A stretch of DNA of 63,525 nt, filler included, from Hyphochytrium catenoides (Eukaryota; Protista; Hyphochytriomycota): assembly GCA_900088475.1 (NCBI GenBank). It is 8 parts of 8 records of this genome, joined end to end, with 100 filler letters (N's around TTAATTAATTAA, not from the genome) between each part and the next. Parts side by side here need not be neighbours in the genome. Positions count along the whole stretch, not along the records: positions 18,305 to 37,880 come from FLMG01000874.1; 7 more parts are not named here. One strand, given 5' to 3'. Below the pieces are notes generated by a model. It saw only the letters and a list, made by a program, of their open reading frames with translations. It made no database searches and was not told the origin of the DNA. Positions 22,200-37,880 of this stretch are shown piece by piece. Position numbers and translations under genes: made by a program. Positions within the stretch are counted from its first letter, which is position 1; each line of letters begins with the position of its first letter.

Positions 22200-25100
22200 T
22201 CAATGGTGACCAGAGCTAGGGCGAGGAGAGGTCTTGGTGGACTTTGTAAACATTGGCTTCAAGTACTTCTGATCGAGCTGTGAGAGAAGGCGAGTCAGAC
22301 CAAATGGGAGGACTTAGTGCGTCGGAGGAAAGAGAGGGCAGCGGAGGTTGCTAAAGCAGACATACACAGGAGAAGCAGATGATAGAGAGGACGTGCTCTC
22401 TAAACGACCCACCTTAGCCCAGATGCTCTGGACATTTGAAGCGTCGAAGTTGTCCATGCTTTGCCGTCGATAGTTCTCTTCAAAGTTCTCTTTGTCTTGC
22501 CTTTTCAGCATCTCGTGGCCCTTGTTCCCTTCATGAACTCGTTTTCTGGGCTCCTGAGGCCGATACAAATGGTTTAATAGATGAGCTGTGCTGTCCAGGG
22601 TATTGAGTGTTTCCTCCTCTGTTTCCCGAACCTCCGACATCCCTTCACCTCACTTGCATTACCTTGACTACCTTATTTTAACCCAGGTTTCAACAGTCTA
22701 TACACGCTGCAACGTCGAACTTACCCTAACTTCCTCTTCTTCGTCGTCCCTGAGTCCAAACTCTCCATCTTCCCGACCGTCAAGGAGTCCATCGTCGGGA
22801 TCATAATTTTCATCGTGAGTAGTCTGTAGACAGATCGTACAGGGAGATTAGAGTCACACAGTGTAAAGGGAAACGTAACCCATGAGTTGATTACAAGAGA
22901 CCAGACACATATTCGCGCCCCTTGCCCAAGCTCAAAAGTGGGAAGGTAGGCAAGGCGACAGATTCTGACAGAGTTGAACCAAAGGGATTTGCAACTATAT
23001 GGAAGAGTGAAAGTGGTGGTATAGTGACTGCTACTTACCCTCATACCAGCCCAAGATAGCAGTGGCTCTGTTAGACCACCGCCAACCACAGTCGTTAGAA
23101 CGCAAACTGGATATTTCGTCGGTTAGAAGGCGATGACAGGGCAGAAACATGGTGGTCGGGGCGAAAATTGAGCGATGCGTAACGAGATATCCTTACCAGA
23201 GAGAGTAGTGGAGACGTAGAGGTCTCGGTGCTTCCCAGGCATTGTCCTGAGTTCAAACTCAGTTAAATCGCGGTTAAAAAGTCCCCTTCACTAACTTCGC
23301 CAACTTTCCCCACAGCCTCGCCAAGTTGCTTACTGTGAAAGAGCGAAAGCCATTGCTCCGCGTAAGCCGCAGAACCAGATGACAAGTTGCATGTTTCGAG
23401 GGATAAGAAGGTTGGGTCGCCTATGTGAGGGTTAAGGCGTTCAGTGACCGTCCACCCTTCTTGACTTTCATTACTCATTTCTACTCTTCGCGCTTGCATT
23501 CATTCCTAACCTCACGTGCACAGCAACTCTTCTCAAAAACTAACAAATTGACTAAGCTACTCGTTCAGCTGTCGCTATCTTACTCGCTCTTCTATGATAG
23601 TCCATGTAAGGACATCTTTCCTTTCCACGTCATTCTACGCCCGTCCCGCCATTCGTCAAGCTCAGCCTTCCCCTTTTGGTACTCCTACCTGAGGTTGACA
23701 ATCCAACAGATGGAATAAACGCTAACCGCCCGAGCAATGAGGCACGCAAGAACGGACTACAATCAGCCAGGGCAGCGTTAAAAAGGCCGTTGAAGAGGGA
23801 TAAATAGGAAGAGGATAAGAAGTGGGACGCGGCACAATAAGTGAGGACTTACCACCACAATGAAGATGATACTCCACCGGTCAAACTGGCCTAACAGTTA
23901 AGCTTGTTCAATACTGATTCTTACTTCAACTTACTGTTTCCCTCTCGTACCTGTGAAGAAGCACATGCCCATGTATATAAACACAAAGAACTCTGCCAGT
24001 CTTGCGAAGCTCTTGAAGATATATTCCGTCGTCACCTAATCATGGAGCATTTACATATAAGCACCCAGGGCATGCACAACCTTGACGGTAACCATGACTG
24101 CTAGGGAAGACCGGATAGAGACAGGTTTGGATAGATGAGCTTCAAAGAGAAGAGGTGCTCGCTACGGGGCCATGAGAGAAGAGACTGACAGGCGGAAAAG
24201 CGATTATTCCTCTTACCTCAGAAGTGTGAGATAAGTTGTTGCAGTTATAGTGCTTCATAATGATCCCGCAGAAGAAGAGAGACATAATACCTAAATAAAC
24301 GTGACTGAGATCGGCGCTCTGAATGCTCTTTTCCCTCGCTCTTTCGCTTTAGTTAGCTGTTCATCAGGGTAGTCGGACATATATATATATGCCTAATTTG
24401 GAGGTTATATACCTGAGAGGTGAAGGACTTCGGCGACCGCGTAGGAAGCGTATGCATAAAGAAGAAGAAGAGAAATCTCGAACTCTGGATAGTCTCTCAT
24501 ATCGGTGTGCTTACACATGTAAGCACAACCTAGTCTGCGGGTATAAACAGAGTGAAGAGGAATTGGCTATGTCACCATTGGCACTTTTGAAAGACCCATC
24601 TGTTGACATGTAAGGCAGTAAACAGCGACGATAGAAAGAGAGCAGGTGGTCTGTGGAAGGTATAATCTGTAATGAGTTCCACGTAGAATAGACTCAAGTC
24701 AGGAAGAGAACTCCGCAGAGAGAGTATTTCGTGCTTAGGTCGACACTTACCCTACCGCGACACCTACAAACACGGACAGCAAAGATACGCCGGCGAAGTC
24801 GATCATCGCGTTGAATATGGTCCATCGCGTGAACGCTTCCCCAGATACGTAGGACTAGGGCAAAAGAAGTGGATAAAGGAAGAGGACACGAAGCATTGAT
24901 CAAATAGGCGCACTAGGGTGAGCCGCGTTCAGAAGGAGGTGACGAAAAATATGGGAGAAGGAAACAGTCTAAACCATTGGTGATGGAGAGGAGCAGCTAT
25001 TACTGTCAACCCCGACACGGGTTAGCTGAAGGGACCGACCAGAAAAAACTAGAGGAAGAACGGCAAGCGAGTATTTCTTGCATTACAATCTCTGTCTCGT

Positions 25101-26562
25101 GGTCATTATTGATCTGCATTCACTTTAACCCGCTTTCGAAATCAGTTACCCCTTACCCTGTTTACAGAAGGGAAGACATGCGCCAGTAGTGGACTGACCT
25201 TCATAAACGTGTTAAATAGTCCAATGCAAACGGCATCGTTTAGAACGCTCTCGCCAAAGACTAATGTATAAAGCAAAGGGTTGCAGCCGAGATCTGCTGA
25301 CCCCATGATGGAGAGAGTTGCTACCGGATCAACCTGATTGAAGCGAAAAGAAAGGCAGACTGAGAAAACCACCAAGAGATGCTTGAGAACGCATTAAAGA
25401 TGAGAAAACTCTGAAAGCCAGTATGACACACAACCCACACAAGGCAACGCCCTCCCTGAGAACGCTCGAGAGACTTCTTACCGAAGAGATTAGTGCTCCA
25501 AAGAGAAGGGCTTCAAGGGGGCTTGACGTGTCAATGTTGATAAGTCCCAAGTTTGCCACTCCGTAGACAATGAAGGCTGTTCCGAACGTCATAATCACGG
25601 TGCCGAAGACAGCGAACAATACTATGGGTCTTATGATGAATCGAGACAAACGAGAGAGATTTGAAAAGCAGAAGTGAGCTCTAAAAAGATCCCACCGTCT
25701 GCTCAGAGAGCATTAAAAGACATCATGACTCACCCGAAGTTATCGAAGAATCGTTGCTAGAAGGTTCACAGAGCACAAACAAGAAAACTTCGTGAGTCCT
25801 CGGCAGGTGACTGAACACTGGGTAGCGACAAGACATGTACAAAACGGACTAACAGAAAGAGGCACAGTGCAAGGAAGGGAAGAAGATCGAGCAGATGTAA
25901 TCAATTCTATGAAGATGCAGTTGCTCACCTGGCTCATCGTGTACCCTGCTTCTAAGATGATGGGAGGAAGGAGGAGAAAGAAGAAGATCTCTGACTGGAG
26001 ATGCCAGTAACCATTCAAGCGAGGACGACAAGGCCACACGGAGGCCATATGGGAGCGAAGGGGAGTCGCAGGAGCAAGGTGAGAGAAGGAGGATGGGTAA
26101 ATACGGCTTGAACTCTACCTGAAAGCTAAGAAACTCGAGTTCCTGCTGGCTAGGATAGAAGAGTTTGGCACAAAGTCCCACAATGAATCCGATCTGTATG
26201 AAAATGAGAATGTCAGAAAAGGAAACGATACTTTTTTCCAGCTAAAGGTTCGGTAGTGGTGAGATGATGACAGAGCGCGTACCAACATCGCGGCTGCCGA
26301 CTCGGGTAGATAGTAGTACCGATATCGCTTTACCAGGTAAGCGACAAAGGTGCACAAGCCTATTAGCACCACCTAGGGAACATACTCAGGTGAGGCAGAA
26401 TATCGCTAAAACGCTTCACGGTGCCTCTCACCAGAAGGAGAGTGTTCAGTGCGCCAAACTCGTGGGCCAGTTCCCCCGTATGGAGGCCTACGCAATCGCT
26501 CAAATCAGACGGGATAGGTTGTCACTTTCACAGAGGCAGGACTTACGATTCACTTCCACCAT
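22200..26562 (-). CDS. Na+/H+ exchanger (CPA1 family, NHE8/NHX-like), multi-exon
   Basis: YYLPESAAAML, FFFLLLPPIILEAGY, FFDNFG, LLFGALISSVDPVATLSI, LVFGESVLNDAV, LSGIMSLFFCGIIMKHY, WFCGLRGAMAFALS, GGGLTEPLL and C-terminal LDQKYLKPMF. ATG at 26562, TGA at 22200. Confidence 0.93.
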
Positions 26563-27877
26563 GTTTCTCCAGTGTAGGATGTACGGGAGACTTTATAGTC
26601 AACCGAGACCAGTTGGCTTTTGACGCCAATTCTAAGGCTCCGTACTACAAGTCCACGCCTGTTTTGCACGTTCCATTTGGTCCAGTTTCCTTTCCAGAGA
26701 GAGCGACAAAGACTTCCTCCCCTTCAATACGCAAGCACGTGCGCCTTTCGCGACGACTACTACTTCAGTCCCACTAGCCGAATGCGACGTCCTAAGAAGA
26801 CACTGAAGCCCTCAAACCGTGATGTCCTGATCATGCAGAGTGCTTCCTTCACGTAACAAACTTAATGAATCTCTGTGATGATCGATGAAGCTGCAGCTTT
26901 CTTGAAATCTTCAGAAATTGCCCCCAGACCGTCAGAACACCAAGACAGAAAACCCTTTGAAGCCTCTGAAAGAACAGAAGAAAGGAGAACTGATTCTGCG
27001 GTTGGGTCCATAGACGATAACCAATTACATAACTATAACATAATCTGTTCGTCGGTTACTACTCCCTGAACCATTCTCCGGATTCAGAATAAGAAGCGGT
27101 ATAGCTCATGATCTGGCGGCGGCTGCGTGCCGATTAGGGTTGGGCCGTTACTGAGTGTACACTAGAGCCTGGGTGATGATGGCTGAGGGTCCACGGCCCA
27201 GGATGTTCTACGACCATAGAAGAAGGCGTTTGCTTCGCTTTCGCCAAAGTCCCATCGCTCCTTCTCCTCATGCTCGTCACCTGTCATCAGCCTTGTCCAT
27301 CCTTCCCCTTCACGTCTCCACTCTTCTCTCGTCCCCTCTCTCTCTCTCTCTCTCTCTNNNNNNNNNNNNNNNNNNNNNNNNNNNNNNNNNNNNNNNNNGC
27401 CAGTCCGGGGATTGTCACACTTCCATAAGATGGGATGAGAGCCAGCAATTCCTATGCCACAGGGTTATTTATGCGGTCCGTCTATGAGGGAGCGGGGATG
27501 ATCATGCGCGCTTGCCCTGACCATTTTTCCTCACCGTTCATCGCCAAGCTGTCATGTTGATCGCTTGATTCATACTTGTACACTCTCACTCCCTCTTCGC
27601 GTCAACCTTCTGAAAAGTCGAGAGCAGTCTCTAGCTGCTATATGTAGCGTTCATCGGGCAAAGAGTCTCTTTCTTCCTTTCTAGCTTGTACCTTCCTTCG
27701 GTCGTTCTCGCCCAACAACTCTAGTCTACCGCTTCTCCCTCTAAAGCGCCTAGTGAACGTCGCACCAGAATGGAAGGCTGACGTCTCTTTAGAAGCGGGG
27801 AACGACATACGAAATACCTCGACCATAGCCAGACAACTCAAACGGGTAACTGGCACGCAAAAAAAGACAGAGGAAAC

Positions 27878-30414
27878 ATGAATAAGTACAGGGCGATCAA
27901 GGCGCTCGGCGATGGTGCCTTCGGACAGGTGACACTGGCATTGAACAGCCAGACAGAGGAGATGGTCGCAATAAAGACGATGAAGAGGAAGTTCGCGACG
28001 TGGGACGAGTGCCTCAAACTGAAGGAGCTCAGGTCCCTTAAGGCGCTAACCCATCAAAATATAGTTAAGCTAAAAGAGGTAAATAAGTCCTTCGCATTGT
28101 CCCTGCTAACTTCTCCTTTGTATGTCTCTATACTTCGAGCTATCCCTGTCTAAGTAGGCCTCTCGCACTCTCGCTCTCTTTGTCTCACCCGTAGACTGTC
28201 TTCGCACACATATGGTCCTTCTCTTCTTTCCATCTTTCAAAGTTGGCTCTTCTTCTCTATGGTCTCATGAAGCCTCCGATCTCTGGCCTCATGAACCCTC
28301 CGATTTCTGGCCTTGCCTTTTGTCTCGCTGCCTCCGCATCTTTATTCTCTTCCCCTTGGTCCCACCTTCTTTCCATGGAAATGTGTTGTGTCTCCTTGCA
28401 GTGCCCTCTGTATGTCCCACACTCTACATCCCTTACACTGTTTTCTCTCTCTCTCTCTCTGGTCCATCCCTCCGTCGCTTGCAGGTGATAAGGGAAGAAC
28501 AAGTGCTTTACTTCGTCTTCGAATATTGCGAGCTAAACCTCTTCAAGTTCATCAGAGAAAGCCAGAAGTTAGACACACGGATAACGGAGAGTCAGATAAG
28601 GAATATTATGCAGCAGGTGTGACCCACTTTCTCTTCTCCCGCCATCCATTACTACTTTCATCCCCCTTTCACGCTGCCTGACTCTCCGTGATAAACTCAA
28701 GCCAAGAGAAGTTTCACCTGCTCTGCGTCGCTCACCTCCGTGCCCTCAGCCCTCACAGCAGCCACAAGTTGTCACCAATAAATCATTTGTCTCCTGTTAG
28801 CCTGCGCTCTAGCTAGGCTCTCTTTTTTCACTTTCCATTATCCTCCGCTAGCTCATTTGCAGTAGTGTTTCTCGGTCTCAACCTTCGTCTCCCTCTCTTT
28901 CTCCTCCAGCTCTTTTCCGGGATAGCGTACACACATAAGCACGGCTTCTTTCACCGAGATATCAAACCGGAAAATCTCTTGATGACTGCAGATCTGCAAG
29001 TGAAGCTCGCAGATTTTGGTTTGGCTCGAGAGATTCGCTCTCGCCCTCCCTACACGGAGTACGTAGCTACTCGCTGGTACCGAGCTCCAGAGCTTTTGCT
29101 AAAAAGCTCGAGCTATAACTCTCCTGTGGACATGTGGGCATGCGGCTGCATTATGGCTGAGCTCTACAACGGTAAAACGCTATTTCCCGGTAAGGAACAC
29201 TCTTATGAGCATAGAAAAGTGACCTGAAGGTATACTAACTAAAAGAGGAACGCTAGAGGGAAAGAGCTCGAGAAATGAGAAGAGAGGACTATGCTACGAA
29301 CCAGATGCCTCATACGCTGACCTACTTGTCACCTTCTGTCACTCATTTTACACATGATAACGTCCCATTCCTCTTCTACTTTTTGCTGCATTTAAAGGCA
29401 CGAGCGAAGGTGATCAGATTCACAAGATCTGCCAGGTATTGGGCACTCCCACTAAGCAGAACTGGCCAGAGGGACTGGCCCTGGCAACACAGATGCAGTT
29501 CCGGTAAATGGCCTAGCATCAGTCGCCTCGCTCTGTCCACTTTCAATCTCTTTTTATCTTCATACCTTATCCCCTACATTTCAATGGTCGAGAAAAGAGT
29601 TGTCTCTTCTTTGGTTGGTCCATTACCAAGAACTCTTTTACACTGAGCTAGAGATCCCTTAACTAACTGCTGACTCTTCTCTGGGGCCGGGACTATTTAT
29701 CTCAATCGGCGCATCCCAAGACTCCCGCTATGTACCCCTATGCCGATGAGCCAGGTTGTCCCTTCTGCGTCTTATGAGGCTCAAATCCTCATCCGAGACC
29801 TCCTTCAGTACGATCCAAGCAAAAGACCAACCGCTACGCAATGCTTTAAGTATGCGTTTTTCTCCCAAGCTCAGGCAGAAGAGGAGGAAGACCGAGTGAT
29901 GGCCTGTGAAGCCAAGGAGAAAGAGAAAGGGGAAGAGGGTAGCGTGGAGGCCAATCATGAAAGTGGGAGAGAAGATAAATGGTATCGAAGAGAGAACAAA
30001 GAGCGAGGAGCGCAGTGGACCACAGCCGATAATGGCCAAGAGAGAGACAGGGTGGCTGAGCCCAAGATAATAGTCAAGAGAATGAGCAGCTTTTGCAAAG
30101 GAGAAGATGATGGGGAGAGGAGGGGTCTCATCACAAAAAGACTGTCACAAGCCGAGGAGGAGTTAGTGCTAGGAGAAGAGGATAAAGCTCCGGTCCTGAG
30201 AAGCAGAAGCTCTAGCAAGGCTTTGGAGCCAACTCTGGATGAAGACAAAGCCGAGGACGAGGATCTGGACGAGAAGGTGTCCCGAGGAAGTGCTCCAGAG
30301 AGAGAGAGAGGAGTCCCAGGCAGTTGTTATAGACACTCCACCGCAATGCTAGCTAAGAAGGGACAGAGTGAATCAGAGCTACTAGATTCCTTGCTGCAAG
30401 AGGTGACGCTTTAG
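27878..30414 (+). CDS. MAK/ICK(CILK1)/MOK-like RCK-family Ser/Thr kinase, 5 exons
   Basis: MNKY...[71 protein letters not shown] (TEY activation loop), followed by a charged disordered tail. Confidence 0.93.
28258..28315. repeat. 24-bp tandem repeat (about 2.3 copies) in kinase intron 1
   Basis: tgg(t/c)ctcatgaa(g/c)cctccgat(c/t)tc repeated. Confidence 0.8.
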
Positions 30415-30824: not shown

Positions 30825-32765
30825 TCAATCTTCGTCCTCGCCTTCCTCATCGTCAGACTCGTAGGTATCGTCATTCTCATCCATCTCTCCTAATACGCCG
30901 ATCTTTCCGCTTGCCTCCAATAAAGTCTCTATCTCAGCTACGCCCCCAGATGAAATAGAGTTCCCGTTAAGGTTCAAAGTCTTCAGAGAAGACTTCTCCC
31001 TAACTCCCTGGACAATGGTCAAAGCACCTTTCCTTGTTATGTCGTTTGTGGCAAGATTCAGGACGGCGAGGAGAGGGAGAGAGGGTGAGGCGAGGAACTT
31101 CGACAGCTCCATTGCCCCCTTAGATCCAAACTCATTCTCCTCTACTTCCAGAGTTTCCAGTTTGCCCTTAGTCGAAATGCATTTTCCTAATGCCACCGCA
31201 GACTCTACGCTCAACTCATTGCTGGAGAGGTCGAGGAAAGAGAGAAGAGGCGCAGAGGTTATCAGCGAGGCGCAAATCTCCTTCAACCCGTCGTCTCCAA
31301 GAGAGCAATCCCGCAAGTTTAGGTGTGTCAGCTGAGCTTGAGCTGCACGTTCCAAGAGTGAGGGTAGCGAGATAAGGAAGAAGAAGGGTTAGAGAATGTT
31401 GCGCAAATTGTTGCTTGAAGAAGAGAGTGCAGAAAGACAAGGGCAGGAGCAGCATTATCAATAGAGGATAAACCATGTCAAGAACTACAAGGCAAGGATG
31501 AGCCGCGATTATACTGGCCAGATGACAAGAGCTGGAATATGCGAACAGCAGTGACTACCGGCTCCAAGTGACCGCCAGAAAAAAAAACGCTATATAACCC
31601 TTGGCAAGGGCAACAACAGTTGGTAGACCAAGGACGTAGAGCTGAAATTTCAACGAGATGGGGAGACAGACTGAAGCAACGAAAACCATGAAAGAAAGAA
31701 GAGCTGCTTGTGTACCTGAAAGAGCCTTCGCCAGTTCTTTCGCTCCCTCAATGCCAAAAGTGTTGTCACTTAGATCCAAGCGCACTAGAGATTTTAGACT
31801 GGCCATCCCCTGGGCGAAAAGAGCGCAACCAGTCCTTCCACAGCGAGTTGCGGAGAAGCGGAGGTCCGTGAGTAGGGGAGAAAGAGGAAGAAGCTTTCCG
31901 ATGGCTGCTCCACCTTCATCGCCGCTCATGTTGTTATAGAAATGGAAAGCCTTTAGTTTCGTGGGCTCTTTTTCTCCCCTAAAGGACAAAATCTCCACAA
32001 TATACTGAGCTGCCTCTCCGGACATGCCATTGTTGCAGAAGAAGATCCTCTCCAGTACCGCTTGTTCCTTAAGAAGTGAGAGACAGGCTCTTACCCCCTT
32101 CTTTCCAAGGGCGTTATCACTCAGGTCTATCTCTGTGAACTGGTGTGAAGAAAGGGAAGTGCAGAGAGTTTCCAAGACCTTCAGTGCCTCGTCCTCTGGC
32201 CTTCCTGCAATCATATCTGCAAGATCGGCCTCTTTCAATCCCTGTAATTCTCCTAGAAGGCCGGCGACAATTGCAGCTCCTTTCTCAGTGTAACTCTTAT
32301 TAGACAGAGAGACCTTTTCATATACTCGTTGCGAGGAAGAGATGAACGGCTGAATGAGAGCTCGGGCCCGATTCTCATCAACGACTTCTCGAGATCCGCC
32401 GAAAGCAAGTACTGGGAGACCAAGAGAGTGTGATTCAAGCGAGAGTAAGATAGACGTAAGAATCAAGCTTAATAAAACTGACAAAGTAACAAGAAGTATC
32501 ACGGAGAAAGAGCTCTTGCTTGCACTGTTTCCCCCTTAAACGGCGTCAGAAGGAAGAAAGTCAAACAAGCACATACTACCCGAGGTCTCTACAAGTAGGA
32601 ATAAAAAGATGAGAATGGGAGCATTTACTCCAGAGAAAGGCTCTACCTGACGGTGCAGCACTGTCGCCAATAGAAACTGCCTTGCTGAACGCCTCTGCCA
32701 AATCAACTTCGTCCTTTGTAACTGAGGGCTCCTCAGGTTCCTCCTCCGTCTCTTCTTCTTCCTCC

Positions 32766-32798
<33 letters not shown>

Positions 32799-34523
32799 CC
32801 AGCGTTCTCGTCATTCTCCTCCAACGAGGATAGTACGTCCAACTTGTTGGCTTTCTTTAGAACCTTCTGTATCTCCTCCACTCCAGCTGCAGAGATACAG
32901 TTGCCATCAATTTGCAGGTGCATAAGCCCGGGCTTGCCTGCAACTGCTTGCGCCAGAGCGATGGCCCCGCTAGCCATTATCTCATTAGTTCCGACATTGA
33001 GAAGAATGAGAGATAACAAGCACTCCTCCTTAGACAGAAAGGAAGAAAGGACCTTTGCTCCCTTGGAGGCGAGCTCATTTTCCTCCAGGAGGATCTGCTC
33101 CAAGTGCTTCTTTTCTCTCACACACTCGCCTAGAGCAGCCATTGATCTGTAGGTCAACTCGTTGCTGGATAAATCAAGAAAGGAGAGGTTGGGGGCACTT
33201 TTCTTCAACGAAGAGAGAACAATCTTGGCCCCTTTGTCTCCTAAGTCCGTGTCACGAAGGTTAAGCGAGACCAAGTGCACCTAGAGAGTGACGAAGAGCG
33301 AAGACGGTTAATGAGAGCAAAATGAGGGAGGCGGAGAGAGAGGAAGGACAGAGAAGAAAATGCGAGGCCAGAAGAGCTATGGCGCTATGCAAAAGCTGTC
33401 CATTTTTTTGCCAGCCCTACTGCTTAACATGGTTGAAAACCTGGACGCGCTTACGCGCTGAGCACTAAACGGAACAAAGAAGAGGAGACTATAAAACAGC
33501 AAGAAAGAGAGAAAAGAGAGCACTGCTTCAAGCTCCAATAAAAGAACCACACCTGCTGGCCGAGGGCACCCGCTAGCATCGTCGCTCCTTCAACGCCAAA
33601 AGTGTTGTCACTCAGATCCAGCTTCCTTAGCAGCTTCAGAGACTTAACCCCTTCTGCGAAAAGGGTGCTTCCCTTTCTCCCGCATCTGGTGGCCGAGAAT
33701 CTTAGCTCTTGAAGATTAGGAGAGTGCTTCAGAAGTTGTCCCAGAGCTATGCCGCCGCCATCTCCGCTCATGTTGTTATAAAAGTGAAAAGTCTCTAGTG
33801 CTGTCGACTTTCCTGCGCCCCTGAAGAGAAGAAGCTCAACAATGTACTTTGCTGCCTCGGCTGACATTCCATTGTTGCAGAAGAAGAGGTGTTTCAGCTT
33901 CTCCTGTCTTTCTAGCACGCCCAGACAAGCTCTAGCGCCTTTCTCTCCTAAGGCATTGTCGCTGAGGTCCACTCTTTCAAGCTGGTTGTTCTGAAGTGCT
34001 TGACAAATAGAGTGAAGCACCTGCAGAGCTTCTGCCTCCGGAAGCGAAGCAATCATATCAGCGAGATCAACATCTTTTACGCCCTTCAGCTGACAGAGAT
34101 AGTCAGCAATGACAGCAGCTGCGGGCGCAGTGTAGCATTTGTTGGACAGTGATACCTAACAGGAGAAGAGCAAGGGTAAGCCTGTGTGAGATAAGTGTGA
34201 AGGGGAAGTCATAGCGACTACCCTAAGGACGACTGAGGACCAGGGTATGCCAAGAATTTGTATAGAAGAGAGGGGGCTACATAGAAAAGCAATCGGGACA
34301 AGGGCATCCAGCCGAGACTTAGGCCATCAAAGTGAGGAAGGGAGGAGGGAACGGCGACACTCGTCCCCCTGTTAAGGCTGTTAGAATCAAATAACAAACA
34401 TACCGAGTCATACTTGGCTTCAGAGATCGGAAGAAGCGTCTCAATCATGCTTTGCGCTTTTTCCTTCGACACTCTCTCTCTTCCACCCGGGAGAGAAAGC
34501 CGCGACATATTCTCTCCAGTCAT
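30825..34523 (-). CDS. RanGAP: Ran GTPase-activating protein with two tandem RanGAP LRR + acidic-tail modules, modelled as a single ~856-aa gene (exons 34523-34404, 34155-33553, 33280-32647, 32411-31716, 31342-30825)
   Basis: Both halves carry VSLSNKxY, DLADMIA..PE.EAL, LSDNALG.KG, FFCNNGMS, FHFYNNMSGD, LRFSATR, LDLSDNTFG, LNLRD..LGD and a D/E-rich tail. The exon lengths sum to 2571 nt (857 codons) with no internal stop. Confidence 0.85.
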
Positions 34524-36164: not shown

Positions 36165-37064
36165 TCACGTAGAAGTCGAATCTGCTTGGTTTCCTCTCTT
36201 TACGGCCTTGTAGATAACTAGGGCGACTGGGTTAAAGTTCTGATCGCATTCTTCCCTATCCACGAGACTCATCACGAAGTACTGTGCCATTTCTGCAAGG
36301 AACATCTCCATCACATTGCTGTCACGGAGGCTGACAGCCAAGAAGACGATGGTCTTGGGCCCACAGAACTGCAGGAGCGTTTGCACTAGTGGAGTTATCA
36401 AGCTCTCTGTGTAGACACAGTCAGCAGCCACGATGAAATCAGGGAAGTAGCAAGGAGCAACCTCTTCTCCATACTTTGATTCGCTCTTTTCTTCTTCTCC
36501 CCGAGATAAGAAGAAGTTCATTATCTCCCCGATGTCGTTCTCCTCTCCCCACGTGATCTCCATGCTTTTGACAGAAGGCTTACAGTCATTGAGCTGCATG
36601 TTTTGGTTCAGAAGAGGAAGCATAGCTTCCATGTCGGTGAGTAGTACTCTTTCGATGTTCAGGCTGCGATGGAGGTAGATCCCTAAGAGCCCACAGCCTG
36701 AGCCCAACTCCAAAACCGTAGTCTCCATAGAGAGGCCAAGCCTTTTCCTCTGTTTGACTAGATAGGCTCCAAGAACAATTGAGCCGTCCCACACTGCTGC
36801 TCCAGTCATGCCGGGAATGGACTGCAGGTCGCGGTTCTGTTTGATGTGCAGGGGTGGAGCTCCTGGCAGGTCAACGCTAAAAACCCCGGCGTTCTGTCTG
36901 CAGAATACGTTTTGCACAATGCCTTCAGCGCCTCGTGCAACATAGAGATTGAACACTTCTTCCTCTGCCCATTCTTGGGCCAGTCGAGCATTCATATGCC
37001 TATTTCCCGAGCAATTTTCTTCTTCTTTCCCGTTCAGTGCTTGCTGTGCTTCCGGTTCTTCCAT
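36165..37064 (-). CDS. Class I SAM-dependent protein-lysine methyltransferase, METTL21/Methyltransf_16 family, intronless
   Basis: TGAAVWDGSIVL, VLELGSGCGLLG (motif I), VLLTD, ITWGE and DFIVAADCVY (DxxY motif) in a 299-aa ORF. Confidence 0.9.
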   Translation of the reverse strand: MEEPEAQQALNGKEEENCSGNRHMNARLAQEWAEEEVFNLYVARGAEGIVQNVFCRQNAGVFSVDLPGAPPLHIKQNRDLQSIPGMTGAAVWDGSIVLGAYLVKQRKRLGLSMETTVLELGSGCGLLGIYLHRSLNIERVLLTDMEAMLPLLNQNMQLNDCKPSVKSMEITWGEENDIGEIMNFFLSRGEEEKSESKYGEEVAPCYFPDFIVAADCVYTESLITPLVQTLLQFCGPKTIVFLAVSLRDSNVMEMFLAEMAQYFVMSLVDREECDQNFNPVALVIYKAVKRGNQADSTST

Positions 37065-37726
37065 AGCCCGTGAATGAAGCTCTGCCCTTGAGCAGTACGA
37101 AGTGCAGTGTTATTTTCCCCTCATGCGCTGTAAAGTGCAGCCGTTTGCCACTTCAACGCGGCGGTCAGCTCCACGTCCGGCACTGATGAGCAGTCCTTAG
37201 ACTTGGGCCACCGTGGAGCTTGCGAAAGATGGCTCTGCACTGATATAGCGTCAATGGCAGTTGCTCTCAAGCAACGCCGACCGATGAGGAGGAGGAGCTG
37301 ACGAAGCCGCTGATGGACAATTGAAGAACAAGAGGGAGGGAGAAAGGACAAGTACTCCCATCGCCCTCACTTCTTCGCCTCATCTTCCATCAGCTCTTCT
37401 TACTGATCAGCTCATCTGGGCTCATCTGGCCCACAGCTCTGCTGATCGCACAACAGGAAGGTGGCTTGTGGCTTGGTCGAACTGTATGGAGGAAGCTGTC
37501 CAGCTAGGGACAGAATGATAGGTAGCCGCTAACCGATCCTAGGAGTCAAGACCGCTAACGGTTATCCTTGACTTAGCTGTTCCGGTAACATCGACGACAG
37601 TGGGTGAGGTATAGGAGGAAGCATGACTTGATGGAATACCGACCCCCCTCCTACATCGGGGATATATCCGTTTCATTCCTACTCATTTCTTCTCCCATGT
37701 GTCCTTTCGACTCTCTCTCTCATTCT

Positions 37727-37757
<31 letters not shown>

Positions 37758-37774
37758 ATCTCTATCTCTCTCTT

Positions 37775-37805
<31 letters not shown>

Positions 37806-37808
37806 ATT

Positions 37809-37839
<31 letters not shown>

Positions 37840-37880
37840 ATCTCTATCTCTCTCTTTCTCTCTCTCTCTCTCTCTTCTCT

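What the first reader, a model, noticed from the sequence alone, without database searches (positions are those of the whole stretch)
30825..34523. Double RanGAP: two diverged RanGAP modules splice into one ~856-aa polypeptide
Seen: what looks like two tandem paralogues can be joined by a phase-1 intron at 32646-32412 (TCAG|GTAGAG...CTCCCAG|TA), giving ...GDSAAPS-V-LAFGGSREVVDE... in frame. The second module has no in-frame ATG ahead of its N-terminal homology region. The same GTAGAG donor is used in the NHX gene (~26117). Each module has its own acidic tail. Established: characterised RanGAPs have one LRR domain plus an acidic tract, with a lineage-specific targeting add-on (SUMO domain in animals, WPP in plants). 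Inference: a tandem architecture in which one module may act as the targeting or Ran-holding add-on. Retaining the intron would give a one-module isoform ending at 32576.
Basis: partly seen in the sequence, partly recalled or inferred. Interest (0 to 1): 0.75.

Follow-up and report, generated by a model that had tools for sequence, protein, structure and literature searches.

The report
Two RanGAP copies probably fused
Two head-to-tail copies of the Ran GTPase-activating protein gene sit 235 bases apart and are most likely spliced into one two-module protein, a layout that is unstudied but already routine in public oomycete protein sets, so it is a modest curiosity.

Summary
The sequence-level observation holds. 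On the minus strand, 34523-30825 carries two complete RanGAP-type modules (LRR domain plus acidic tract), 63% identical in the N half and 48% in the C half. Module B has no in-frame ATG between an upstream stop (32538) and the start of its homology. GT(32646)...AG(32412) joins the frames in phase 1, giving 856 codons.

Frame compatibility alone is not significant: 25 in-frame GT..AG pairs exist. The case for fusion is indirect:
- B is as well conserved as A yet has no start codon.
- The 235-nt spacer has the length and pyrimidine-rich make-up of the gene's three homology-defined introns.
- The nearest same-strand gene lies 1.6 kb away.
- The junction is the C-terminal tail of a single RanGAP followed by the N-terminus of a single RanGAP without its Met.

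Two-module RanGAPs of about 800-880 aa are the norm in oomycete protein sets (19 named species). I found no paper that remarks on it.

Trees of both halves place A and B as sisters, so this doubling looks independent of the oomycete one.

Nothing indicates that either module is degenerate. No RNA evidence was available.

The parts
34404..34523 (-). Module A exon 1. ATG at 34523. Encodes the N-terminus MTGENMSRLSLPGGRERV..., which matches the 'M..F.L..G.RE.V' start of single RanGAPs.
34156..34403 (-). Module A intron 1, 248 nt, TCG|GTATGT...GTTAG|GT. Module B has no counterpart.
   Evidence: composition
33553..34155 (-). Module A exon 2, the N half of the LRR domain. Colinear with human RanGAP1 and S. 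pombe Rna1. Carries S-L in DMIASLPEAEAL (34024-34059) where most RanGAPs have G-R.
33281..33552 (-). Module A intron 2, 272 nt, CAG|GTGTGG...CTCTAG|GT, phase 0. It lies at the position homologous to module B's intron.
32647..33280 (-). Module A exon 3. Holds the C half of the LRR domain, the acidic tract (32726-32821), the conserved RanGAP C-terminal tail motif DEVDLAEAFSKAVSI (32669-32713), and then GDSAAPS.
32412..32646 (-). Candidate linking intron, 235 nt, phase 1, CAG|GTAGAG...CTCCCAG|TA. An alternative donor GGA|GTAAAT has its first intron base at 32628. If the intron is retained, module A's frame stops at 32578-32576.
31716..32411 (-). Module B exon 1. Encodes (V)LAFGGSREVV... and the N half of the LRR domain. 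No Met of its own. Keeps G-R in DMIAGRPEDEAL (32182-32217).
31343..31715 (-). Module B intron, 373 nt, CAG|GTACAC...GTGCAG|CT, phase 1.
30825..31342 (-). Module B exon 2. Holds the C half of the LRR domain, a short acidic tail (30828-30884) and the TGA stop (30827-30825).

Best explanation
Proposed origin (inferred): a complete single RanGAP gene was duplicated in tandem within this lineage, carrying one intron with it. The two copies then became one gene. The stretch holding copy A's old stop, the short spacer and copy B's old start codon is now removed as a 235-nt (or 217-nt) phase-1 intron.

Proposed product (inferred): one polypeptide of about 856 residues, laid out as LRR crescent, long acidic tract, former C-terminal tail motif, 8-residue spacer, second LRR crescent, short acidic end.

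Proposed function (inferred): both modules look like working RanGAP domains. The protein is most likely the cytoplasmic activator of Ran-GTP hydrolysis, built as a covalent tandem pair on a flexible acidic tether.

Shown here: the two modules, their RanGAP homology, the missing start of B, the intron-like spacer, and the existence of the same layout in other organisms. Splicing, GAP activity of each module and any benefit of the doubling are not shown.
For: RanGAP identity:
- Both N halves align colinearly from near the N-terminus with human RanGAP1 (9b62_G) and S. pombe Rna1 (1k5d, 1yrg).
- The named relatives are RanGAPs.

Module B needs module A:
- There is no ATG in frame between the stop at 32538 and the homology start at 32409.
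- B nevertheless keeps nearly all of the columns conserved in at least 85% of 157 single RanGAPs, departing only at two of them (G for A, F for L), and is as similar to the singles as A is.

The spacer looks like an intron:
- It is 235 nt, against 248, 272 and 373 nt for the three homology-defined introns.
- Its pyrimidine fraction is 0.63, against 0.66-0.67 for those introns, 0.42-0.48 for the exons and 0.49 for the true 3' flank.
- The upstream same-strand gene, a lysine methyltransferase, ends 1641 nt before A's ATG. Only 167 nt would separate A's read-through stop from B's homology.

The junction makes sense:
- Single stramenopile RanGAPs end '...acidic...D[ED]LAxxLxxxx[IV]*' and start 'M..F.[FL]..G.RE.V'.
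- The spliced junction DEVDLAEAFSKAVSI-GDSAAPS-V-LAFGGSREVV is exactly tail plus head without the Met.
- It lines up with the linkers of the doubled proteins, for example Aphanomyces '...LDVLSFDAKREVV'.

Precedent:
- An HMMER scan of 1.84 billion representatives puts five 801-868 aa two-module proteins on top, with a sixth of 851 aa at rank 7.
- 19 named oomycete species carry them.
- P0005 (864 aa on a 2812-bp contig) and P0183 (857 aa on a 2710-bp contig) leave no room for an intron of the size seen here.
- AlphaFold2 of the closest natural double, P0001, gives two confident LRR domains (pLDDT above 90), a disordered 394-424 linker and pTM 0.54.

Lineage-specific origin:
- A and B are sisters in careful trees of the N half (83/96) and the C half (94/91).
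- Forcing B into the oomycete module-2 clade costs 25 log-likelihood units, AU p 0.035.
Against: - There is no transcript or protein evidence.
- Frame-compatible GT..AG pairs are plentiful (25), and the exact donor is ambiguous.
- Oomycete annotations are themselves split between two-module and module-1-only models. The precedent therefore partly rests on gene predictions of the same kind.
The 80 metagenome loci held only single modules.
- The comparison of intergenic distances rests on one neighbouring gene.
- Support for the A+B sister pair is moderate, and the AU p-value is marginal.
Confidence: 0.72

Rival explanations
1. Two separate genes. A ends at TAG 32576 with a 23-residue extension. 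B is transcribed on its own and starts from an unrecognised 5' exon or from a non-AUG codon.
For: - A's read-through frame closes quickly, at 32576.
- Several oomycete annotations, and one Logan ORF on a 1443-bp contig, give module-1-only proteins that end 1-10 residues after the tail motif.
- No RNA data exclude this reading.
Against: - No in-frame ATG exists for B, and neither of the two ATGs in the spacer opens into it.
- Only 167 nt would have to hold a 3' UTR, a promoter and a 5' UTR, whereas the neighbouring same-strand spacing is 1641 nt.
- The spacer has intron-like, not 3'-flank-like, composition.
- The tail motif normally sits at the very C-terminus of single RanGAPs. In this reading it would be followed by 30 unrelated residues.
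Confidence: 0.15
2. Both forms are made. Splicing gives the two-module protein, and retention of the linking intron gives a one-module isoform that ends at 32576. This is not exclusive of the best explanation.
For: - The sequence allows both readings.
- One-module and two-module models coexist for orthologues in oomycetes.
Against: - A retained-intron transcript with a premature stop would usually be a target for nonsense-mediated decay (general knowledge, not tested here).
- No expression data are available.
Confidence: 0.25
3. Module B is a decaying, untranslated duplicate that lost its start codon.
For: B has no ATG and an in-frame stop lies upstream.
Against: - B has about 403 open codons over two exons with intact GT-AG borders.
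- Nearly all strongly conserved RanGAP columns are kept; B departs at only two (G for A, F for L).
- Its mean identity to single RanGAPs equals that of A.
- Its branch in both trees is no longer than A's.
Confidence: 0.04

Closest known systems
Single-module RanGAPs: S. pombe Rna1 (1k5d, 1yrg), human RanGAP1 (9b62_G), plant RanGAP1/2
   Same: - Ribonuclease-inhibitor-type LRR crescent, colinear from the N-terminus.
- An acidic tract directly after it.
- Conserved DMIAGR, LSDNA, NNG and NNMS motifs.
- PMC4624696 describes the family as an LRR of about 330-350 residues plus an acidic region of about 40.
   Different: - Two complete modules in one reading frame.
- No WPP domain and no SUMO-attachment domain were found by Pfam.
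- The tail motif that ends single RanGAPs becomes an internal linker.
Two-module RanGAP-like proteins of oomycetes, e.g. Aphanomyces euteiches CAK4074499.1 (P0003), Saprolegnia parasitica SPRG_08465 (P0182), Albugo laibachii CCA16018.1 (P0007), Phytophthora ramorum PRIC2_009004 (P0170)
   Same: - Same order of parts: module, long acidic tract, tail motif, short spacer, 'F.F..REVV' module, short acidic end.
- Similar length, 801-878 aa against 856.
- Same uncertainty in annotation between one-module and two-module models.
   Different: - The window's modules are each other's sisters, not orthologues of oomycete module 1 and module 2.
- Oomycete module 2 has its own fixed changes, such as LDLSDC and A for G, which window module B lacks.
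- Identity is about 46-57% in the N half and about 33-41% in the C half.
Conjoined or read-through fusion genes made from tandem duplicates (general mechanism, from established knowledge)
   Same: Neighbouring same-strand genes become joined when the stop, spacer and start are turned into an intron.
   Different: The two partners here are paralogues of one another, so the product is an internal repeat of a whole protein.

Membership tests
RanGAP (Rna1/RanGAP1 family) | RI-type LRR domain colinear with Rna1/RanGAP1 from the N-terminus | tested here: met
   Both N halves align to RanGAP1 9b62_G residues 62/67-264 and to Rna1 residues 37/42-239. Pfam finds LRR_6 in every exon except A's 40-residue exon 1, which had no hit.
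RanGAP (Rna1/RanGAP1 family) | Acidic tract directly after the LRR domain | tested here: met
   Module A at 32726-32821 and module B at 30828-30884.
RanGAP (Rna1/RanGAP1 family) | Conserved Ran-interface residues: equivalents of human D86 and R91 (the DMFTGR motif) and D121 (in LSDNA) | tested here: inconclusive
   - Module B keeps D, G-R and LSDNA.
- Module A keeps D and LSDNA but has S-L for G-R.
- The same S-L occurs in 5 of 157 single RanGAPs.
- The D86 and D121 contacts come from bioRxiv 10.64898/2026.04.28.721414.
- The importance of R91 (R74 in Rna1) is from my memory of Hillig 1999 and Haberland & Gerke 1999, not re-read here.
RanGAP (Rna1/RanGAP1 family) | Closest named relatives are RanGAPs | tested here: met
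   Names given by the sources include 'Ran GTPase-activating protein' in plants, brown algae and oomycetes.
RanGAP (Rna1/RanGAP1 family) | Stimulates GTP hydrolysis by Ran | not testable with these tools
   Needs a biochemical assay.
Plant-type or animal-type RanGAP | WPP domain (plants) or C-terminal SUMO-attachment domain (animals) | tested here: not met
   Pfam reports only LRR families in the exons.
Two-module RanGAP as in oomycetes | Both modules in one polypeptide | tested here: inconclusive
   An in-frame splice is possible and favoured on indirect grounds. No RNA evidence is available.
Two-module RanGAP as in oomycetes | Same order of parts and homologous linker | tested here: met
Two-module RanGAP as in oomycetes | Modules orthologous to oomycete module 1 and module 2 (shared ancestral duplication) | tested here: not met
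   A and B are sisters in both half-trees. The AU test gives p 0.035 against B joining oomycete module 2.

The most novel reading that the evidence does not exclude
Head-to-tail fusion of a whole RanGAP to a copy of itself may have arisen independently at least three times in stramenopile-type lineages: in oomycetes, in the environmental lineage of P0005 near a raphidophyte single, and in this genome. Each fusion would have turned the spacer between tandem duplicates into an intron. That would point to a recurring selective advantage of a covalently tethered RanGAP pair, for example as a stand-in for the homodimer reported for mammalian RanGAP1.
Probability: 0.35. Interest if true: 0.55.

Novelty: new variant of a known kind. 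Interest (0 to 1): 0.4.

Why it matters
RanGAP sets the cytoplasmic end of the Ran-GTP gradient, and every characterised example has one LRR module.

A two-module form seems to be the standard RanGAP of oomycetes, which include major crop and fish pathogens. It apparently arose again independently here. That makes it an unremarked architectural variant of a core nuclear-transport enzyme.

It raises three concrete, testable questions:
- Are both modules active?
- Does tethering replace dimerisation or pore targeting?
- Are one-module isoforms also made?

It also flags an annotation problem. Orthologues are modelled as 441 aa in some oomycete genomes and about 850 aa in others.

Tried and rejected
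- The one metagenome scan returned 80 loci, all single-module. Some have introns, such as L068 and L072.
- The sigma-70 and terminator scan of the spacer is not meaningful for a eukaryote.
- Foldseek of the P0001 model against the PDB does not separate RanGAP from other RI-type LRR proteins. RanGAP1 and Rna1 are among the hits, with the highest sequence identity.

Ideas rejected:
- Module A as a dead GAP because it lacks the G-R motif. The same S-L occurs in 5 of 157 single RanGAPs, and A is as conserved as B.
- Oomycetes also having a separate single RanGAP. The 441-443 aa models are 81-90% identical to module 1 of the doubles of other Peronosporales.
- A shared ancestral doubling with oomycetes, suggested by the similar linker. 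The linker similarity is explained by the conserved tail and head of single RanGAPs, and the trees disagree with it.

- The spliced 856-residue model was never joined, searched or folded. All window searches were done exon by exon, by reference.
- The trees were built separately for the N-half and C-half exons.

Literature:
- Seven literature searches, four of them aimed at the doubled architecture, and five papers opened turned up no description of a doubled RanGAP.
- This library is incomplete.
Full report
**What is there**

The piece is eukaryotic and rich in introns. The minus strand of 34523-30825 holds two head-to-tail RanGAP-like units.

My exon model, built from homology and GT-AG borders:
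- Module A: 34523-34404, 34155-33553, 33280-32647.
- Module B: 32411-31716, 31342-30828, with the TGA stop at 30827-30825.

The units are clear paralogues. The N halves are 63% identical (E 8e-90) and the C halves 48% (E 2e-43).

Pfam sees only LRR families. Against solved structures, both N halves align colinearly from near the N-terminus with human RanGAP1 (9b62_G) and S. pombe Rna1 (1k5d, 1yrg). Each LRR domain is followed by an acidic tract.

The two units share an intron at the homologous position, phase 0 in A and phase 1 in B. A has one further intron that B lacks. The duplication was therefore genomic, not a retrocopy.

Every sequence statement holds.
- The donor TCAG|GTAGAG (32647/32646) and the acceptor CTCCCAG|TA (32412/32411) exist.
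- The join is phase 1 and reads ...GDSAAPS-V-LAFGGSREVV.
- The exon lengths sum to 856 codons.
- Between the donor and the acceptor there are only two ATGs. Neither reads into B, and an in-frame TAA sits at 32538.
- Without splicing, A's frame stops at 32576.

Frame compatibility is not evidence by itself. I enumerated 25 in-frame, stop-free GT..AG pairs in this stretch. One is a second plausible donor, GGA|GTAAAT with first intron base 32628, which would lengthen the linker by six residues.

**Why fusion is still the best reading**

1. B cannot start on its own, yet it is under constraint.
   - It keeps nearly all of the columns conserved in at least 85% of 157 single RanGAPs; its two departures (G for A, F for L) are minor and it keeps all those of the C half.
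   - Its mean identity to the singles equals that of A: 0.431 against 0.437 in the N half, 0.343 against 0.349 in the C half.
2. The 235-nt spacer matches the three homology-defined introns.
   - Length: 235 nt against 248, 272 and 373 nt.
   - Strand composition: T 0.39 and pyrimidines 0.63, against 0.66-0.67 for the introns.
   - It differs from the exons (0.42-0.48) and from the real 3' flank after B (0.49).
3. The upstream same-strand gene, a Methyltransf_16 lysine methyltransferase at 36165-37064, ends 1641 nt before A's ATG. Only 167 nt would be available between A's read-through stop and B's homology.
4. The junction is biologically sensible.
   - Single stramenopile RanGAPs end with '...acidic...D[ED]LAxxLxxxx[IV]' at the very C-terminus.
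   - They begin 'M..F.[FL]..G.RE.V'.
   - The spliced junction DEVDLAEAFSKAVSI-GDSAAPS-V-LAFGGSREVV is that tail followed by that head without its Met.

**Relatives**

I ran an HMMER scan of 1.84 billion representative proteins with B's first exon. Five 801-868 aa proteins containing two full modules came out on top, a sixth (P0007, 851 aa) ranked seventh, and singles of about 410-460 aa followed.

Cluster look-up and a profile search name these doubles in 19 oomycete species:
- Aphanomyces: five species.
- Phytophthora: capsici, ramorum, nicotianae, fragariaefolia.
- Pythium: oligandrum, insidiosum, [Pythium] brassicae.
- One species each of Saprolegnia, Nothophytophthora, Globisporangium, Lagenidium, Hyaloperonospora, Bremia and Albugo.
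- Achlya and Thraustotheca also carry them, in longer gene models.

The linkers of the doubles align with the window's junction. An example is Aphanomyces '...VAVEALTKAMEHVSLDVLSFDAKREVV'.

Two doubles sit on contigs barely longer than their coding sequence: P0005, 864 aa on 2812 bp, and P0183, 857 aa on 2710 bp. They cannot contain an intron of the size seen here. So two-module polypeptides are real somewhere, not only products of gene prediction.

The oomycete 'single RanGAPs' of 441-443 aa turn out to be module 1 of the double. They are 81-90% identical to module 1 in other Peronosporales and stop 1-10 residues after the tail motif. The one-module or two-module ambiguity therefore exists there too, and I found no distinct single paralogue in oomycetes.

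**Origin**

- Careful maximum-likelihood trees, built separately for the N-half and C-half exons, both place window A and B as sisters: 83/96 and 94/91.
- Oomycete module 2 forms its own strongly supported clade.
- Holding B with oomycete module 2 costs 25 log-likelihood units, AU p 0.035.
- P0005's two modules are also sisters (99/93 and 100/89), next to a single whose cluster includes a Fibrocapsa japonica sequence.

The doubling thus looks recurrent. Old gene conversion cannot be excluded, and the support is moderate.

**How it probably works**

AlphaFold2 of the closest natural double, P0001, used a 37-sequence alignment. It gives two confident LRR crescents (pLDDT above 90), a disordered acidic linker at 394-424 with a short helix over the tail motif, and pTM 0.54. 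That means no fixed orientation between the modules.

I infer a cytoplasmic RanGAP with two independently folding, probably both active, modules on a flexible acidic tether. PMC4624696 mentions that mammalian RanGAP1 is a homodimer. A covalent pair could play that role, but this is speculation.

Module A has S-L where 87% of singles have G-R. The R aligns with R95 of chain 9b62_G, which I take to be human R91 assuming a four-residue N-terminal offset in that chain. I recall this Arg as functionally important, but I did not find or re-read the source. The same S-L occurs in 5 of 157 singles, so it does not show that A is inactive.

**Limits**

- There are no transcript data.
- The source organism is not identified. 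The modules fall among stramenopile sequences in the trees.

**Verdict**

This is a real and probably fused two-module RanGAP gene, with confidence 0.72 for the fusion. The architecture is not new to the databases but appears undescribed in the literature I could search. Here it seems to have arisen independently.

Noticed in passing
proteins P0189-P0192, P0188, P0194 (oomycete models; not in the window): Oomycete 'Ran GTPase-activating protein' models of 441-484 aa are module 1 of the roughly 850-aa two-module gene. They are 81-90% identical to module 1 of other Peronosporales and are cut 1-10 residues after the tail motif. The same gene is annotated inconsistently across genomes.
   Followed up: partly
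protein P0005 (JGI/IMG, 864 aa, contig of 2812 bp): This is a second, apparently independent doubled RanGAP. Its two modules are sisters in both trees and sit next to a single whose cluster contains a Fibrocapsa japonica (raphidophyte) sequence. Unlike the oomycete doubles, it keeps the tail motif at its C-terminus.
   Followed up: partly
protein P0105 (1094 aa): An LRR protein with three nearly identical RanGAP-like modules (end branches 0.01-0.03) on a very long stem. It is probably not a true RanGAP.
   Followed up: no
proteins P0185 (Achlya hypogyna, 1170 aa) and P0186 (Thraustotheca clavata, 1039 aa): Two-module RanGAP models that also carry a protein-kinase domain. These could be merged neighbouring genes or real fusions.
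   Followed up: no
C-termini of single RanGAPs (P0199, P0201, P0203, P0012, P0013, P0220 and others): A conserved extreme C-terminal motif, D[ED]LAxxLxxxx[IV], follows the acidic tract. It becomes the internal linker helix in the doubles. It is loosely NES-like, but its function is unknown to me.
   Followed up: partly
window 36165-37064 (-): A single-exon 299-aa ORF with a Methyltransf_16 (lysine methyltransferase) domain, E 1.7e-28. It is the upstream neighbour on the same strand.
   Followed up: partly
window 27878-30414 (+): A multi-exon protein kinase gene (Pkinase hits in exons at 27878-28150 and 28865-29224) with a long acidic, low-complexity C-terminal exon. It converges on the RanGAP gene, with 410 nt between the two stop codons.
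   Followed up: partly
window about 25100-26400 (-): Na+/H+ exchanger-like exons (FFFLLLPPIILEAGY and others). CAG|GTAGAG lies at 26119/26118 at the end of one ORF. The exon structure was not worked out.
   Followed up: no
window about 27330-27400 and 37600-37880: A short run of N (an assembly gap) lies inside the piece, flanked by CT-rich simple sequence. A long CT/TC microsatellite-like stretch lies at the right-hand end of the piece.
   Followed up: no
window 34156-34403 versus 32300-32340 (-): Module A has an intron between ...AKYDS and VSLSNK, but module B is uninterrupted at that point. The intron the two modules share differs in phase (0 against 1). This means intron gain or loss, and intron sliding, since the duplication.
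   Followed up: no
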